Shown piece after piece: positions 21,042 to 42,700 of a DNA stretch of 64,000 bases. A model generated the notes under the pieces. That model saw nothing but the letters and a program-made list of their open reading frames with translations. It was not told where the DNA came from and ran no database searches. The translations under genes were made by a program, and so were the position numbers. Source of the DNA: Dimorphilus gyrociliatus (Eukaryota > Animalia > Annelida); contig CAJFCJ010000003.1 in the NCBI GenBank assembly GCA_904063045.1, positions 434,001 through 498,000 on the forward strand, read 5' to 3'. Every line of letters starts with the position of its first letter. Position 1 is the stretch's first letter.

Positions 21042-24000
21042 TTAGACGAACCATTCTTTAACATCTTTCTTACTTTTTGTGGCTGTTGGTGCGACTACAA
21101 CTTGAGCATTTGGAGCAGTGCTTAGAACTGCTGTCTCTGTCGGCGGAGGTTTTGTGGCCGCTTGTTGGTAGGCTATATAATTTTTACTTTCATCGACTTT
21201 ATATGAACCGTCGTCTCTCGCTCGGTACTTGTAAAGTACATAAGTAACGATGAGCAAAAGAACCAAGACACCGCATGCTACTCCTATAATTAGTCCGAGA
21301 TTTAAAGAAAACTTCCCCGTTGATATCTCATTAGGCGGAGGTTCGGATGCTGGGTTAACAGAAACTGTAGTTTTGCGATTAAAAGGTTCATCATCTGTCG
21401 GTTCAACTGATAATATAGATGGTTCGTCTGAAGTGCGTGAATTTGTTGCCAAGTCAATGCCTTCCTTAGTTGTTGTACTCTTCCTGACCGGTGATACAGT
21501 CTTTGAGGTTGTTCTTGTTCTCTTTGTCGTCGGCACTGTAGAGTATACTTTTCCTATTGTTGTTCTTTTAGATACCGGCATTGAGGTTGAACTAACGGTT
21601 GCTGTCGTTGTGTATTTTGGTCGGTTAGTCGACTTTATAGAGGCGCTGCCCTCGTAATCCTCATCATCCGTTTCAATTGTTTCTGTAAGCGTTTTTGGCG
21701 TCGAAACTGGTCTGCTACTTGGCAAATGAGGAATAATAAAGGAAAAATGTAAAATAAATGCAACGTTGCTTTTATCTATAATGCAATCTTCTCTTTTTCA
21801 TCTTACCTGCTAGGAATGACGACCTTGGTAATCGGTTTAGGGCGGAAGACGGGCGTTATAAGGGCGTCTCTGGGAGTGGGCGTAACATTCGAACAGTCGT
21901 CCTCATCATCGCTTTGACAGCCAGAACCAGCGCCAGCCCCGGATGTAATTAGTTCTTCGGAGGGACTAGAGCCGGACTGCAAAATAATTGCTTATATTAC
22001 GATTGCCATCAGCATTAATATAAACACTGCAATAATATTAACAGCAGCATCAGATATGAATATAATTACACCGAGGACTTATTGCTACGATTATTAGAAA
22101 TTTTTCTCGTCAATTTACTTCTACAATATGTTGTCGATAGACGGAGCAATAGGCAGAGACAAGCGATTGAGGCCTACTCCTTAAAAATAGAAGGAGGAGC
22201 AAAAAGTGAGGCTAACAAATGCGTACAACTGCAAAAATCGATATATTAAGTGCAGGTTATGGAATACGATTGACACTAATTATGTCTTGGAACAAATTCT
22301 CCCGCACGTAATTAGCTTTGCACCGTGTCTCCATTCAACTTATTGATCAAAAGTATCGCACAAGGGAGGAGATAGTACATATACCTGATAAATCAGGATA
22401 GGTTCCATTAAAGGAAACGCTAGAGGGCACCAAAAAGCAACGGCATGCAATTACTGATTAACATGGAGATGAGAAGATAGAGACGATTTTCTAATTGATA
22501 GTAAGCGATTAAAGATTTAACATCCTATATTTCTGTCAACCGTATTGGATTTATGCGGTAGTTCTTTCATTATGCAACTGCAAAATTATATACCCAACCT
22601 TAAGCTTATTGGGCCATAACTCTCGCAACAGAACTACAGAGGGCGCACAGTTATTATACTTAATTCCACCCCCTTTCTCCTCTCTTTCTAAGACGTATTA
22701 AAGAATGACAGATGAGTTACCACACGAGAACCTATACCTATATCGATTACAAAACTGTAAACTGATAGCACATATACATATTAGTATATAATTCTACATA
22801 TAAGCATCTATATCGGCTAAGCTAAAATAGGTGGCGCGCAAATAAACTAACATATTCTCTGTTCAATTCATCAATTAAATTAAGAATATAAGCCCGAACT
22901 GGCTTTTAATTGATTAAGGGGTCGAAAGAGCAAACGAAAACATTCGCTTTACAAACAAGAATAAACAAGACAACCGACATTTCTCCATACAAAAGCAGGA
23001 TCGAAGGAGAATGAGAAAACGATAGAGAGAGAAAACAAGGGTGAGAGGAGGATATTCATGACCAATAGGTGGCACTCGTCTTTAAACGATGCTATGTTAC
23101 TCACGGAAAATAATAAGCAAGGAGATTGTTTCAATAGTAGAATATAGAAAATTATGAGATAGGATGAAAAGATATTCATAATTCGTTCATAATTTTCTCC
23201 TTCCGTAAGGCTACGAGTCAATCTTTTTATCCAAGGAGCGTTACTCGAGTGACGGCAGGCAAAGTGACGCTTTTTTTTCTAAATGCAACGCCACCAAGTG
23301 GTGAAGATTGGTATTGCTTGGCCTAATGCATATGGCTTTTTCGATTTTAGCATTTAATGTCACGAAAGGGTCGGATTTCCAGTTTTTCTAGATTTGTCCT
23401 TGAAAAGCAAAAAAAGGTAGCCAAGGGAAAAAACGTGCATAAAAAAATTGGAGCAACGTTGGCTGACGAAGGAGTAATTCATAGTTCCCAAAAAAAGACG
23501 ATCTGTACGTGGAGAGGGAGTGAAACAATCCATATTCTCGGCGTGAAACGGATTTTCTATTTCACGCCTGGAAAATTCAGTGGCAAACAAATTTCTTTCT
23601 TTGTACTTAAAAAGTGACGCAGCTCTTTTTGGGTCGGGCGTAAAACAAAGTCCAATTATTGAAATCAATAAATAAATAATTGAACATAATTCCATAAGTT
23701 CCCAATGTGTCTTCTAGTTTGTCGAAGAACGTGCGTAAGTGTTTGTAGTTGCTATTACCACTTTGCCCTTTTCATTTCATCTCTAATACTGTTTGTAAAT
23801 AATGAATGAGGATACCTACAACCTATAACATGAAATATTTAAAAAGCCTTCAAGTTTTAAACTCTCAATAGACTGGCTAATAATGCTCGCAATAGTCATT
23901 CAACAGCCACCCCTCCCTGAAAAGTGGAAAATATGATGCAAATTTTCCGCCCATTCAACACGACAAACCGCAAACGTGACAAGCACGGATAAATAGTTCG

Positions 24001-27000
24001 AAAATTGACCGTATCAACGGAATACATACATACGCCTACTGAACTGGGCCAAACTATATTTAAAGTATGAGAAATGAAATAAAGATTTTTTCCAATTCCC
24101 TTTACACAAACATGACAAACGCCAAACGGAAATTAGGATATAAAACATGGCAATAGGTGGCCCTAGTAGCATTGCCTACAGTATAATCGATTGACGAGAA
24201 AATTTTTTTTTCAAAGTAATCAATAAGGATCTACTCACCTTGACTTTGCCGGTGCTTTATACATAATATATATATGAAAAAGAGAGAAAAAAAAAACAAT
24301 TAACTAGAATACTTTAATTATCATTAATACAAAAGGTTCAATTCTTCGAAAGTGTACCTTGTTAAAGGAGATTTGTACTCTGTAACATTGCCGTGTATTT
24401 TAATTTTGTTGCTCCCATCTTTCGCAAGCGAAAATATATGGACTTTGTTAATAACTAGACCTATTTTGGTGAAAAACAATAACTCGTTAATATTAAAACG
24501 TAACGTGGGGTGCATATGACTGCTAACCGGATAAAATCCCCGTAAATAATTGATTTTTGGCCTCCATTGCGCCGGTTCCGATCAGAACTCTTTTGGCCCC
24601 TTTGAAGTGCCTACTGCTGGAATCTGTTGCAAAAAAAATGAATATAATTTAATCATATATCCAAATATACTATCATTTCTGTTATTAGAGTATAGATGGC
24701 GACAGGTGACAATAACGTTCGAAAAAGGTAAAAATTTTGGTGCTGAACGCCATCTATAGGGTATTTGTATCACAATTCGTTTGTCAAAATTGATTTGTTG
24801 ATTAGTTAATTATACGGAGTTATTGACAGGAAAAATTGAAAACAAACAAGTTAAACAAAAAAAAATTCGAAAAAATAGAATATTTCTTTTAAAAAGAAAA
24901 TGAAAGATATGTAAGGAAAAGGTTTTAGTAATTACTTGATTTTGATTGGTTGGCAAACTTTTTGAAATTATTTGGTATGATTTAGTACCAGTGAATTGGT
25001 GTGAAAAGTTAGTTTGGGTTATGCAAATCAGCCCCGCTTAAGCAAATATTATGATTTGAAGAGAATCTTAGTTGTTTGTACAACTAGTACTCTTTTACAA
25101 ACTTTTCTATATGTAATAAATATAGAATACACCGTTAAAATGTTCCAAACAGGTGAGAGTATTTTTTTTGTATCCTTTACCTGAATAATTTTCGATATAA
25201 TCCTCTCCAAGTAATTCTTTTAATAAAGAGGCTGCGTATTTTACAGAAGCATATAATAGAAAAGAAAAAGAAAGGCAAAAAAAACGGAAGAGAGATAAAA
25301 TAAAGAAATAACAAAAAAATGAATAAATTAAAAAGAGACAATTAATTCCGAGAAATCCATAAAAACAGGAAGTAGGCCGGTTATTTTGTATGAAAAAAAG
25401 AAGAACCAATAGGCTTTATATATATTATCATTCAAAAGAGATGAGATCGGTCAGGAAATGAGATATATAATGAGGCTCGTGGTTATATAAAAGGAAGAAA
25501 GGACGTTTGAAGGCTGCCTATTCCTTTTTGCCTTCTATCAGCATTAAAGCCGTATCTCCATAGATATGGACAGTATTATATTTATATATATATACTGTAT
25601 ATATACAGTAAATATATATAAAATACAGTATGTGTATTTATAGTGTATATATAAAATCTATCATCTCTTTTTACGTTGAAAGGGAGGAGAGCAAAAGCAT
25701 AGGCTTAGGTAAAAAGAGAAGAGAAGAGGGAACGTGTGTGGAAATATACCATTAGGTGATGGAAATGTGGGTGGGAGGATTTGTATCAGATATTATATAA
25801 TACATTAATGGCTTAATGTCCAATAATATTTGGTCGGCTATATTTTCATGCTACTTTTAGTAGGATAGGAGTTGTTTACCCTCCCTATGTAACCTAAGTG
25901 GCACCTCATTAATATTCCCCATTTCCTGAAGATATAAATTTAGACCAAACTTCTTTTTCATATCTTTTTTAATGACTTTACCTCTTTTCTTGGTTATCTC
26001 AATATTCTCATTCCTATCTACTTGAAGCCATGCCTTCTGGGCTTCACGCCGAAATCTGACAACATGATATTGACCATCAGAAACGTGCGAAAGAAGATAT
26101 AAACGAGATGCCGGTTTCTCTCCTCCAAGATTAAAAGATGCCAAAATGTTTCCCTGAGTCTGAAAATGAAAGGATATAATTGATATGCATTGAAATATAC
26201 AGGGTATAGTATGTGAAATGGGATACAGATGGCGTTTCTCCATTCCGATAGATAAGTATTATAGTTTTAGTAGGTTGAAAACTTACTAGTTCTATTTTTA
26301 TAAAGAAATTATGATGAGAACTTTGCAATTTTATAATGTCGCCACTTAAATCTGTAGTTTTGATGCCGAACGAAATTGTATCATTTAGGTTTGAGGCTGG
26401 ATGCTCAAGGTCGATATCGTAAACCATAAAGCTAGATTCAGAATCGGCCTTGGTCTCTTCATTGTGAAAGGCATAGGAAATTGCATCTGGATGAAAAAGA
26501 AACGATATCACGTTCACGGTCAAACCCCGTCCGACGGATAGCACTAATTCGGCACTCTCGGGAGGATGGGCAAGTAAGAAACAGAAGACATTATCGATTA
26601 TTACGATTATTTCTTTCTGTTGTTATTGTAAGGCTTGCACCCACCTCACCTCATTTCAGACTAATGAATAATTAAGAATTTAATCCAACAACTTACGTTG
26701 ATCGCATTGATTACCAACGAAAGAAGTCATTTCACAATCGCAACTAACTCTCGTAGGATGGAGTATGCATACACCTTGATTTTTGCACGTAGAATCGCCG
26801 CATTTATTTTCGGGAGCTGAGAAAAGAGTCAAACTAGTAATAAAAGAATATGAAATTTTTTTTTTACTTTTTTTTTCCATCTATTAATAAAGGAGAGTAA
26901 AAGTGAATTGTTAGTGATATTCTATAGGAATTTTCTTCCTTCTACTACTTTGATCCGGCTTAATGATGGAAATTCAAGTCTTACCAGAGCATCCGCTCTC

Positions 27001-39734: not shown

Positions 39735-42700
39735 GTCTGCTCGTCTCTGTCTCTCTTCCATCTCTCATTCCTCTTCCGACTATTGATTGTCTCCATTTAT
39801 CTTATCGCCTTGACTGCATTTAAAATCTATATCCTCCTACTCGTAGCCGTCTCTCTCGTCAGACTCGAGTATCTATAAATATTGCTAGCCCGAGTGTATC
39901 TAAACTAAGAAGCGTCACGTGGCTTTAGTATCACTGAGTAGCCCCCGAATTTTTCGATTATTAAACAGAAAATTGATGTACGACTAATCGATGCAAAATT
40001 AAGGTGGATCATTAACATTTGCTTGCTCACGCTCAACGGATGTCTTGTTATTTACCACACATTTCGCTTCATTACCCTCCAATACTTGAACAAATATCCA
40101 TTACTAATTGCTAACCTTCAATTACCCAGACTTGAATAATTAATATCTCTTTATACTACAACACATCATAAATAACGCTGGAATTCGTATCACAGCAGTG
40201 GATTACTCAAATTCACGCCCAGGTCAAAAGGTTCAGTCTATATTCTCAGTTAGACGATCATCATTTCTCAGAGATCGTCTATGACGTGCTCAAATAATCC
40301 CTTCCCTATCTAATCAAACATTGAAATCCCGATTTTCTCTCGTCTTCATATCCATAATAGTGTCGAGAGAGGACGGTTGCTTTTTGCAGTCTAAAAAGGA
40401 TTAACTGTGACTGTTACTGTTTATCCGCTTTTCTCGGGGACCAATAGGCCCATCAGCTAACCTTTAAGTAAAATTCCCCAAGTGCTATTCTTTTTGTTTG
40501 TTAACCGAAAACTTCAATTGTTATTTCTTTTCCTTCAGTAATACTAATATTTTATTCATCCATTAATTGGGGCCTTCATTAAAGCGTATATTTTTGTTAG
40601 TTAGTTTGCGTTTTTATCTGTTATTTTAACACACCTATTTCGTCTTTTACACGCCTATATTCTATTTTTTAATTCGCACTCGAAAGTTCCTTTATTCTAC
40701 AGTAATTAAATATTAAAAGATTGTGAAAAGAAAAATACACAAATATATCGCTTTTTTGTATTTTGATACTATTAAATAAATGATAACGAAGAAGATCGAC
40801 GTCCAATTTATCTTATCGTCGTCTCTTAGTATTTAATCGAGTACGTATAAATATTACTAGTTTAATACAAACACAAGGCACTCGAAAGAATATTATATCT
40901 AGAGTGATGATTAGCATACACACAAACTACCCAAGGCGACAATATTTTGTACTCACTACAGCGAAAAAAACCGCTATGACTAAATGGAGAGGCGACAATA
41001 TGGCCATTGTTATTGAAAAGAGGAAAAAAAATCCAAAATGGACAGATACCAGCTGTCATTCTTGAGCTTTCGATTTTATACATAAAAAAAGAATGTCTCT
41101 TTTACTAGGCTTATAAATAAATAATAAATAAAATAAATCAAAAACGTTTTACACACATCTAAATTTAATAAACTTATATATTATGTTTATTTAAATATAT
41201 CAAATATTAAAGTTAGAGATAATTGTATATTTGCTAACTATAGTATGCGAATATGCCAATGTCTTTAGTTGTATATACTGTATAACTACGAACTTATACA
41301 TCTTTAAAGATGGCTTAAATACGTACACAAATACATAGAATACAATTATACTTGGATACATACAGTATTTTCTAATAAATATATATTTATGTATATTTAA
41401 ATGAATGTAATTCACCAACTAACATTGTATGCATTTCCTTTTTGTTCTACGGATAGATCTGTAGACTTAGGGTTATAAAAAGGTTTCTACTAATATCTAT
41501 TATTTATAGCTGGTAGAGTTACATTTAAATATGCTGAACATTCAATATTAATGTGAATACTATAGCGAACAGATATTTTTAAACATTGACTATGCACACA
41601 CAGACAGTATAAATTTATATATATATATATAAATTTTTACTTCATATAAAAGAAGATATCACTTATTTATTATATGTATATTACATATTCTTTATTCAAC
41701 AAATTAGATACAGTGGTAAAAAGAGCCCCTTTGCCAAACTATGCTATTATCATCTTTAGACAACTTGATAAATTCAAGAAAGTATAAGAGTGGTCACGTA
41801 TAACTGGAATATCATCCTCATATTCAAATAGTCCTATCTATGTATATATGTATATGAACGCATATTAGATATAAATATATATTTATATACAAGCATATTC
41901 ACTTATATAAACAATATAACATATGCAATTAAAGATATAGAGAATTTTTTCCAGAGGATGAATTAAAAGATTATATATAATGTATATATATATATACTGT
42001 ATATATATCGTTTCTATTTAATTAAAAATATATTCAAATACTCCAGAAATTACATAAAATTCAATTCATATGAATATAATAATATTTATATATTCTGTAT
42101 TCCATATATGATATGTATACTATATAGCTATGAAATAACTCTAGGCCTACGTCGCAGAAGCAATTTATTAAGCAACAGACGTTTTATATAAGGTAGAAAG
42201 ACGAGACTATTATCTTATCAATAATTTATAAGCCTATTACTTTATTTTCAAAAATTTGTTATACATACCTCCACCAGCAGAAATATATTCATAAATATAT
42301 ACAAGACAAATATATAAGTGACAGTATATATTTTGTATAGCCACTTGAAAACCGGAAGTAAGAGTGAGACGTTTCTCCAAGTCTATTAGGCTTGTTTGTC
42401 TCCGCTGTTTGTAAGTATTTGTCTGGTGAGAAGGAAAGTAATTTTCTAGGCGTTTGCGTTCTAGATGGAGCATCTCATTTCGACACTGGCGTCATCTATT
42501 GAGAAGAATATACTTAATAAGCCTCGTTAATCCATATTACGCGAAATATCTTTTTCAGCTTATTTACATGTGGTCATGACAAACGCCATTTGCAGCGTAT
42601 CTTTTTTTTTAGAACATAGATATTTTCTGTCAACTTTTCACGCCTACTGACAATGCCGAATCCCCCAAGTACCCTACATATTTTCTATATAATTTCCAAT

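What the first reader, a model, noticed from the sequence alone, without database searches (positions are those of the whole stretch)
23105..23300. Hidden signal-peptide exon: a gamma-neurexin-like isoform in an invertebrate
Seen: inside the 2.3-kb intron after LNS6, an ATG (23179) starts 25 codons with a hydrophobic core (YLIIFYILLL) and ends at a perfect GTGAGT donor. Its phase matches the Cys-loop exon, giving a 306-aa protein of signal + Cys-loop + stalk + TM + PDZ tail with no LNS/EGF domains. Established: LNS-less gamma-neurexins from internal promoters are known for mouse Nrxn1 and C. elegans nrx-1. Inference: a spiralian example would suggest the gamma isoform is ancestral to bilaterians or evolves repeatedly.
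Basis: partly seen in the sequence, partly recalled or inferred. Interest (0 to 1): 0.85.

Follow-up and report, generated by a model that had tools for sequence, protein, structure and literature searches.

The report
Candidate short neurexin start exon
Inside a long intron of the neurexin gene of the tiny marine worm Dimorphilus gyrociliatus lies a 25-codon signal-peptide-like exon that a related species keeps intact; it could start a short "gamma" neurexin like those of mice and nematodes, but no RNA evidence could be obtained.

Summary
On the minus strand, ATG 23179 opens 25 codons (hydrophobic core YLIIFYILLL) that end at GTGAGT (23104-23099). They are in phase with the Cys-loop exon (21976-21807) and give a 305/306-aa protein with no LNS or EGF domains. 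The gene is the neurexin of the annelid Dimorphilus gyrociliatus.

The exon is unlikely to be chance. It is the only in-phase ATG-ORF-GTRAG combination in the 2,262-nt intron. Composition-preserving shuffles produce one as signal-like in 0.2-6% of trials.

Genomic contigs of a close relative (77% identity across the intron) keep the ATG, frame, phase and donor. The exon has six substitutions, three of them synonymous, and no indels. Twelve other 25-codon ATG ORFs in the intron are all broken in the relative. The start codon of the official short model (DgyrCDS2039, ATG 22408) reads ATA in the relative.

The caveat is that the exon sits in one of about nine highly conserved non-coding blocks rich in CTCF-like motifs, so conservation alone does not prove coding.

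Verdict: a plausible gamma-type first exon, about 50% likely. It would be a new member of a known kind. Public CAGE-seq and RNA-seq data for this species would settle it.

The parts
23105..23179 (-). Candidate gamma-type first coding exon: ATG plus 24 codons with a signal-peptide-like hydrophobic core
   Evidence: In the relative it has 92% identity, no indel, 3 synonymous and 3 non-synonymous changes, and an intact ORF.
23099..23104 (-). GTGAGT splice-donor consensus. It is one of only two GTRAGT hexamers on the sense strand of the intron; the other is the intron's own donor.
   Evidence: GTGAGTAACATA is identical in the relative.
23176..23190 (-). Out-of-frame 4-codon upstream ORF (ATG AAC GAA TTA TGA) whose stop overlaps the main ATG
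   Evidence: Read. It is kept in the relative with one substitution.
23146..23198 (-). Predicted hairpin (12-bp perfect stem plus an inner 5-bp stem) enclosing the upstream ATG and the main ATG
   Evidence: I13.: -16.9 kcal/mol, z -3.3. Relative: -15.3 kcal/mol, z -2.9. Both arms are unchanged, so there is no covariation to test.
23223..23231 (-). TATA-like GATAAAAAG, about 25-27 nt upstream of YR dinucleotides at 23207-23204 (inferred possible TSS)
   Evidence: Sequence. It lies in a stretch that is 100% conserved over 23276-23227. TATA-type narrow promoters are usual in this species (PMC7854359). Function is inferred only.
23288..23301 (-). CTCF-like motif CCACTTGGTGGCGT, about 110 nt upstream of the ATG
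   Evidence: Identical in the relative. In this species CTCF motifs lie mostly near TSSs (PMC7854359).
23052..23400 (.). Conserved block (about 80-100% identity in 50-nt windows, against 77% across the aligned intron region) containing the candidate promoter, the exon, the donor and a downstream CTCF-like site
23066..23075 (+). CTCF-like core TAGGTGGCAC, 30 nt downstream of the donor. It is one of four same-strand cores in the intron.
   Evidence: Conserved within a 27-nt identical stretch.
21977..24238 (-). 2,262-nt intron between the 16-nt microexon and the Cys-loop exon (the species median intron is 66 bp)
   Evidence: PMC7854359.
24239..24254 (-). 16-nt microexon that restores phase 0 between LNS6 and the Cys-loop exon in the alpha form
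   Evidence: It is 100% conserved together with its splice-site flanks.
21807..21976 (-). Cys-loop exon (SG-rich putative glycosaminoglycan site and C...DDEDDC loop) that the candidate exon would splice to
   Evidence: 89% identical in the relative.
21042..21714 (-). Last exon: Ser/Thr-rich stalk, TM segment, neurexin-type cytoplasmic tail ending KEWFV, and stop codon
   Evidence: Pfam PF01034. The acceptor at 21714 is supported by the annotation and the relative.
22385..22408 (-). First exon of the public model DgyrCDS2039 (MEPILIYQ), the competing start
   Evidence: Its ATG is ATA in the relative. It has no signal peptide.

Best explanation
The 75-nt ORF at 23179-23105 is a real alternative first coding exon of the Dimorphilus gyrociliatus neurexin gene. 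On this reading, transcription starts at an internal promoter in the conserved block just upstream; this step is inferred. Candidate promoter parts are a TATA-like box at 23231-23223, YR initiators near 23206, two CGTCAC motifs and a CTCF-like site at 23301-23288. The exon encodes a signal peptide and would splice from the GTGAGT donor (23104) to the Cys-loop exon (21976). The product would be a 305-aa type I membrane protein with signal peptide, SG-rich/Cys-loop segment, O-glycosylated stalk, TM segment and a tail with a PDZ-binding end, and no LNS or EGF domains. That is a gamma-type neurexin. Shown here: the sequence anatomy, the low chance expectation, and preservation in a related species. 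Inferred, not shown: transcription, splicing, signal-peptide function and any synaptic role.
For: (1) It is the only ATG-ORF-GTRAG first-exon candidate in phase 0 in the intron, and only two GTRAGT hexamers exist there. (2) Local-composition-preserving shuffles give such a candidate with hydrophobic-core score >=2.0, 2.5, 3.0 and 3.3 in 5.8%, 2.7%, 0.8% and 0.24% of trials. The observed score is 3.36; the alpha form's own signal peptide scores 2.39. Dinucleotide shuffles give 0.1-2%. The whole window, both strands and three phases, holds only 3 such candidates. (3) In the relative's genomic contigs (L003/L004, 77% identity over the aligned intron region) the ATG, 25-codon frame, phase and donor are intact. 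There are 6 substitutions (3 synonymous, 4 at third positions, pN/pS about 0.27) and no indel. (4) Of 13 sense-strand ATGs in the intron followed by at least 25 open codons, only this one keeps its ATG, has no indel and has no stop in the relative. The failures include four ORFs in blocks of 87-97% identity. (5) The start codon of the competing annotated exon is lost in the relative. (6) The intron is 34 times the species median length. Large introns in this species tend to carry open chromatin, and CTCF motifs lie mostly near TSSs (PMC7854359). (7) The architecture matches known gamma forms: a short unique hydrophobic N-terminus joined to the stalk with the Cys-loop (PMC7480106; vertebrate-type examples P0135 and P0092).
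Against: No transcript-derived protein with this N-terminus exists in the protein collection in the 123-392 aa range. The published annotation, built with transcript assemblies and CAGE, does not use this exon. The exon is no more conserved than the non-coding sequence next to it (92% against about 95% upstream). The intron holds about nine such blocks, so the ORF could be preserved as a by-product of regulatory constraint; I estimate chance retention in such a block at about 0.27. The synonymous excess is not significant (P=0.15; third-position excess P=0.09). Other weak points are an out-of-frame upstream ATG, a -17 kcal/mol hairpin over the start codon, a non-consensus exon side of the donor, 25% GC with only 3 G, and no basic residue in the n-region. 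SignalP could not be run. Only one relative was available.
Confidence: 0.5

Rival explanations
1. The block 23400-23052 is an intronic regulatory element (an enhancer or CTCF-bound element of the neurexin gene). The ATG, the T-rich open frame and the GTGAGT are a coincidence, carried along by the block's non-coding constraint. No transcript starts or splices here.
For: The intron contains about nine blocks of 87-100% identity, more conserved than the LNS6 exons (75-86%). Some carry homeodomain/POU-like words by eye. Six CTCF-like motifs cluster here: 4 exact cores on one strand, where 0.38 are expected in the whole window. The sense strand is T-rich at this spot, which makes any open frame hydrophobic. 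The exon is not better conserved than its upstream flank. The annotation does not use it.
Against: It requires a 0.2-6% coincidence times roughly 0.27 for retention in the relative. None of the 12 control ORFs survived, including four in blocks of 87-97% identity. The coincidence would also have to fall in exactly the intron and phase used by known gamma-neurexins.
Confidence: 0.3
2. The GTGAGT at 23104 is a used splice donor, but the exon is not a gamma-coding first exon. It could be a non-coding or poison exon included in some alpha transcripts from an upstream acceptor (for example the AAG at about 23392), or the first exon of a non-productive intronic transcript. The signal-like ORF would be incidental.
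For: The donor and its +7 to +12 positions are perfectly conserved. A pyrimidine-rich acceptor-like sequence at about 23413-23392 is conserved, and AAG acceptors appear to be used in this gene (the microexon). The upstream ATG and the hairpin over the start codon would disfavour translation from 23179.
Against: Read from the alpha frame, such an exon hits a stop after 12 codons, and the relative has a 1-nt deletion there, so nothing coding is conserved. It leaves the in-phase ATG and hydrophobic ORF unexplained. There is no RNA evidence for this either.
Confidence: 0.12
3. The public model is right: a short transcript starts near 22430, with first exon ATG 22408 to 22385 (MEPILIYQ) joined to the Cys-loop exon.
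For: This is the deposited gene model DgyrCDS2039. A conserved CTCF-like core lies 13 nt upstream, and the donor region CAGGTATATGTAC is conserved.
Against: The ATG is ATA in the relative. The 8 residues give no signal peptide for a protein with a roughly 200-aa ectodomain. The neighbouring model ends by reading through a donor into an intron, and the gene is split at its long introns, which is typical of ab initio splitting. The donor GTATAT is weak.
Confidence: 0.05

Closest known systems
Mammalian neurexin-1-gamma (Nrxn1 third promoter; Sterky et al. 2017 as cited in PMC7480106)
   Same: It has a short unique N-terminal sequence joined to the stalk with the Cys-loop, TM and PDZ-binding tail, and no LNS or EGF domains. 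Its first exon lies in an intron downstream of the LNS6 exons. Vertebrate-type short proteins in the database show a 14-22-aa hydrophobic unique N-terminus (P0135, P0092).
   Different: The N-terminal exons share no sequence similarity. The mammalian form is proven by cDNA, promoter and protein work, whereas here nothing is shown at the RNA or protein level. The worm form would begin immediately before the SG/Cys-loop segment.
C. elegans NRX-1 gamma/short isoforms (Kurshan et al. 2018, as described in PMC10680821 and PMC10689797)
   Same: It is a protostome single-copy neurexin gene with a distinct internal promoter giving LNS-less isoforms that share the TM segment and intracellular domain.
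   Different: Several splice forms with different short ectodomains are documented in the worm. Their expression and function (synapse stabilisation, behaviour) are shown experimentally. No homology of the first exons can be claimed.
Vertebrate beta-neurexins
   Same: They also use an alternative internal promoter with a unique signal-peptide exon.
   Different: Beta forms splice in before LNS6 and keep one LNS domain; the candidate here keeps none.
Cnidarian delta-neurexins (PMC11294457)
   Same: They are short neurexin-type proteins.
   Different: They are encoded by separate genes, not by an internal promoter of the alpha gene.

Membership tests
gamma-neurexin (LNS-less isoform from an internal promoter) | The host gene is a bona fide alpha-neurexin (6 LNS, 3 EGF, neurexin tail) | tested here: met
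   Pfam finds Laminin_G and EGF on exons from 38.8 kb to 26 kb, and PF01034 on the last exon. The tail is homologous to other neurexins.
gamma-neurexin (LNS-less isoform from an internal promoter) | A unique first exon downstream of all LNS/EGF exons, in frame with the shared stalk exons | tested here: met
   This holds in silico only. The exon 23179-23105 ends in phase 0, as does the start of the exon at 21976, giving a 305/306-aa ORF with one stop at the end.
gamma-neurexin (LNS-less isoform from an internal promoter) | The N-terminus works as a signal peptide | tested here: inconclusive
   By rule of thumb it fits: a 10-residue hydrophobic core scoring 3.36 against 2.39 for the alpha signal peptide, Pro in the c-region, and small residues at -3/-1 after C21 or G27. 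There is no basic n-region. SignalP was not available and no experiment was done.
gamma-neurexin (LNS-less isoform from an internal promoter) | Transcription from an internal promoter (TSS in the intron) | not testable with these tools
   Only motif-level hints exist: a TATA-like box and a CTCF-like site, both conserved. CAGE-seq data exist publicly (PMC7854359) but could not be read here.
gamma-neurexin (LNS-less isoform from an internal promoter) | Spliced mRNA joining the unique exon to the stalk exons | not testable with these tools
No such protein exists in the collection. No metagenome contig holds the exon-2 start.
gamma-neurexin (LNS-less isoform from an internal promoter) | Evolutionary conservation of the unique exon as coding sequence | tested here: inconclusive
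   The exon is intact in one close relative while 12 of 12 control ORFs are broken. However, with only 6 substitutions the synonymous excess is not significant, and the surrounding non-coding block is equally conserved.

The most novel reading that the evidence does not exclude
Dimorphilus, and by extension Spiralia, makes a gamma-type neurexin from a conserved internal promoter and a signal-peptide exon in the same intron position as in mammals and nematodes. LNS-less neurexin would then be present in all three bilaterian superclades and could be an ancestral bilaterian isoform rather than a lineage-specific oddity. The start codon would sit inside a conserved uORF/hairpin unit that may gate its translation.
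Probability: 0.4. Interest if true: 0.65.

Novelty: new member of a known kind. Interest (0 to 1): 0.55.

Why it matters
Gamma-neurexins carry neurexin's intracellular synapse-stabilising function without trans-synaptic binding domains. So far they are documented only in mammals (NRXN1) and C. elegans, and papers disagree on whether Drosophila has one: PMC12665717 says it does, PMC10680821 says it does not. A spiralian example would bear directly on whether the short form is ancestral to bilaterians. It would also correct the fragmented public annotation of this gene. The locus is compact, and CAGE, ATAC and staged RNA-seq data already exist for this species, so the claim can be tested directly.

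Tried and rejected
Nothing from 25575-25627 was sent to any database or search tool afterwards. My local scripts read the whole window file, including those places, for in-session motif scans and a local alignment. No result from those places is used.

(2) A scan of JGI metagenome contigs for the start of the Cys-loop exon gave 0 hits.

(3) The short neurexin-tail proteins found were checked as possible gamma forms in other animals. P0009 (L002) is an intron-retaining transcript. P0028 (L006) is a genomic ORF running into an intron. P0003 (L007) is open at its 5' end. None is informative.

(4) The neighbouring RasGAP ORF was used as an anchor to fetch loci from more distant relatives. Only the same close relative (94% identity) turned up, then a drop to 43%.

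(5) Rfam found nothing across the intron. Pfam found nothing above threshold on the three largest intronic ORFs. The 111-aa intronic ORF at 23695-23363 is broken in the relative.

(6) The supplements of the genome paper held here contain no neurexin entry, no CAGE data and no ATAC peaks. Sterky 2017 and Kurshan 2018 are not held.

(7) I rejected the idea that the exon is an in-frame cassette of the alpha form. From the acceptor-like AG at 23211 it would be 106 nt long (not a multiple of three). From about 23391 it would be 287 nt long and hit a stop in the alpha frame after 12 codons.

Full report
**What is there**

The window comes from Dimorphilus gyrociliatus. The last exon of the gene is 100% identical to DgyrCDS2039 on scaffold CAJFCJ010000003.1. 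The minus strand carries an alpha-neurexin gene running from ATG 38816 to the stop at 21042. Pfam finds Laminin_G and EGF domains in the expected order and the neurexin/syndecan-type tail on the last exon.

After EGF3 (about 26.7-26.9 kb), LNS6 is spread over several exons. The last two are 24626-24527 and 24461-24353, read and matched by eye to the LNS6 end of P0011. A 16-nt microexon (24254-24239) then restores phase 0. A 2,262-nt intron (24238-21977) follows. Next come the Cys-loop exon (21976-21807), an 89-92-nt intron and the last exon.

Every stated fact holds.
- ATG 23179 opens 25 codons, MNIFSSYLIIFYILLLKQSPCLLFS, ending at 23105 before GTGAGT.
- The phase matches the Cys-loop exon.

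**Is it chance?**

I expected an AT-rich intron to offer many such ORFs. It does not.
- The sense strand of the intron holds only two GTRAGT hexamers: its own donor and this one. The candidate is the only ATG-ORF-GTRAG combination ending in phase 0.
- Dinucleotide shuffles of the intron give at least one 15-45-codon candidate with a hydrophobic core in 0.1-2% of trials.
- Shuffles that keep local composition in 30-120-nt blocks, and so keep the T-rich patch, give 5.8%, 2.7%, 0.8% and 0.24% for core scores of at least 2.0, 2.5, 3.0 and 3.3. The observed score is 3.36. The alpha form's own signal peptide scores 2.39.
- In the real 64-kb window, on both strands and in all three phases, only three such combinations exist.

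I therefore treat the effective chance level as a few percent, not a few per thousand.

**Comparative test**

An exhaustive protein search with DgyrCDS2039 found a 112-aa fragment 92% identical to its C-terminus (P0013). That fragment lies on genomic Logan contigs L003 and L004, with the same convergent RasGAP neighbour. These contigs align to window 24793-22008 at 77% identity.

In this relative the ATG, all 25 codons, the phase and GTGAGTAACATA are intact. The peptide reads MNIFSSYLIIFYILLLQQSPCLFYS. The exon has six substitutions and no indel. Three are synonymous and four fall at third codon positions, giving pN/pS of about 0.27. Neither excess is significant (P=0.15 and P=0.09).

As controls I took all 13 sense-strand ATGs in the intron followed by at least 25 open codons. 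Only the candidate keeps its ATG, has no indel and has no stop in the relative. The failures include ORFs in blocks of 87-97% identity and the 111-aa ORF at 23695. The start codon of the public short model (ATG 22408, MEPILIYQ) is ATA in the relative.

**Why this is not yet proof**

The exon sits in a block (23400-23052) that is 80-100% identical, and the 220 nt upstream are conserved as well as or better than the exon itself. The intron contains about nine such blocks. They are more conserved than the LNS6 exons (75-86%) and similar to the Cys-loop exon (89%). From the pooled block rates (7.6% substitutions, 0.0077 indel events per nt) a non-coding 75-nt ORF would keep its ATG, GT and frame and gain no stop about 27% of the time (stop-free fraction). 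So conservation adds only a factor of about 3-4.

The intron is clearly regulatory.
- The 10-nt CTCF-like core YAGRKGGCRC occurs six times in the window, where 0.38 are expected.
- Four of these are on one strand inside this intron, about 200 bp apart (22421, 22637, 22828, 23066).
- Two further near-matches lie at 24154 and 23301.
- Five of the six intron sites persist in the relative. One has changed sequence but moved towards the canonical core.

The genome paper reports a median intron of 66 bp, open chromatin in unusually large introns, and CTCF motifs mostly near TSSs. It also reports narrow TATA-containing promoters with YR initiators (PMC7854359). These facts fit an internal promoter here: the CTCF-like site at 23301-23288, two CGTCAC motifs, GATAAAAAG at 23231-23223 and YR dinucleotides at 23207-23204. 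They fit an intronic enhancer or insulator cluster equally well.

**RNA evidence**

None could be obtained. The run search listed only metatranscriptomes with small shares.

The protein collection holds no product with this N-terminus among proteins of 123-392 aa. It also seems to hold no D. gyrociliatus transcript or Logan data for this locus, so that absence means little.

The public annotation does not use the exon, although it drew on transcript assemblies and CAGE. At this locus it is plainly unreliable. The neurexin gene is cut into several models at its long introns. One model (419 aa) reads through the donor at 25981 to a stop at 25857.

**Weighing**

- Likelihood of the anatomy if the exon is real, against chance: about 10.
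- Conservation: about 3-4.
- Discount for post hoc selection and for the exon's absence from a transcript-aided annotation: about 3-5 fold.
- Prior that an annelid neurexin has a gamma-type start in this intron: 10-20%. The form is known in mammals and C. elegans. Papers disagree about Drosophila (PMC12665717, against PMC10680821).

This puts a real gamma-type first exon at roughly even odds. I give it 0.5. A regulatory block with a coincidental ORF gets 0.3, a spliced but non-gamma exon 0.12, and the annotated start 0.05.

**Comparison with known forms**

Mouse Nrxn1-gamma comes from a third promoter. [quoted passage not shown] C. elegans has alpha/long and gamma/short classes driven by distinct promoters (PMC10680821; PMC10689797). 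The candidate has the same layout, including the Cys-loop. Membership rests on transcription and splicing, which I could not test. I found no report of a gamma form in Spiralia in the held literature. If real, this is a new member of a known kind. Its value lies in phylogenetic placement.

**Other features at the start codon**

A perfect 12-bp inverted repeat (23198-23187 and 23157-23146) plus an inner 5-bp stem folds into a hairpin enclosing the upstream ATG and the main ATG. It has -16.9 kcal/mol and z -3.3, and it is kept in the relative at -15.3 kcal/mol and z -2.9. Both arms are unchanged, so there is no covariation to test. It might gate translation of a short leader, add constraint on codons 8-11, or be a DNA-level element. 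This is unexplained.

Noticed in passing
window 22421-22430, 22637-22646, 22828-22837, 23066-23075 (+); 24154-24163 (+); 23301-23288 (-); also 20221 (+) and 45793 (-): There is a cluster of CTCF-like cores (YAGRKGGCRC). Six exact copies occur in the 64-kb window, where 0.38 are expected. Four lie on one strand about 200 bp apart inside this one intron, and two near-matches lie there too. Five of the six intron sites persist in the relative. The 22828 site changed sequence but moved towards the canonical core. The genome paper says CTCF motifs usually occur singly, so this array is unusual.
   Followed up: partly
window 24160-24035, 23984-23935, 23909-23736, 23610-23511, 22615-22566, 22525-22376, 22350-22104: These conserved non-coding blocks are 87-100% identical to the relative. 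They are better conserved than the LNS6 coding exons, and several carry TAATTA / ATTGCAT-type words by eye. They are probably neuronal enhancers of the neurexin gene.
   Followed up: partly
window 27948-25857 and 22408-21042 (public gene models): The public annotation splits the neurexin gene into several models at its long introns. One model (419 aa) reads through the donor at 25981 to a stop at 25857. DgyrCDS2039 starts at an ATG (22408) that is ATA in the relative.
   Followed up: yes
window 24239-24254 (-): A 16-nt microexon (C ACC GGC AAA GTC AAG) between LNS6 and the Cys-loop exon is needed to keep the alpha frame. It and its splice-site flanks are 100% identical in the relative.
   Followed up: partly
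window 21714-21719 (-): The last exon has a tandem acceptor (ccaag|tag|C). The annotation and the relative's sequence support the downstream site, giving a 305-aa rather than a 306-aa short form.
   Followed up: partly
window 23146-23198 (-): A conserved hairpin (12-bp perfect stem, z about -3) encloses the upstream ATG and the candidate start codon. Its role is unknown.
   Followed up: partly
L005:9010-9846: An ENA metagenome contig holds an intronless 278-aa ORF (P0036). It has a signal-like N-terminus, an acidic ectodomain with SG and Cys motifs, and a neurexin-type TM and tail ending KEWYV. No Laminin_G ORFs lie in the 9 kb upstream. It could be a stand-alone gamma-like gene in an unidentified animal, or a last exon whose ORF extends upstream.
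   Followed up: partly
window 40957-41007 (-): A second signal-like ATG-ORF (17 codons, MAILSPLHLVIAVFFAV) ends at GTGAGT, 2.2 kb upstream of the alpha start codon. It could be chance or an unannotated exon.
   Followed up: no
The stretch was left out of all later database and search-tool calls.
   Followed up: no
literature: Two recent papers contradict each other on whether Drosophila makes a gamma/short neurexin. PMC12665717 says it does; PMC10680821 says it lacks it.
   Followed up: no
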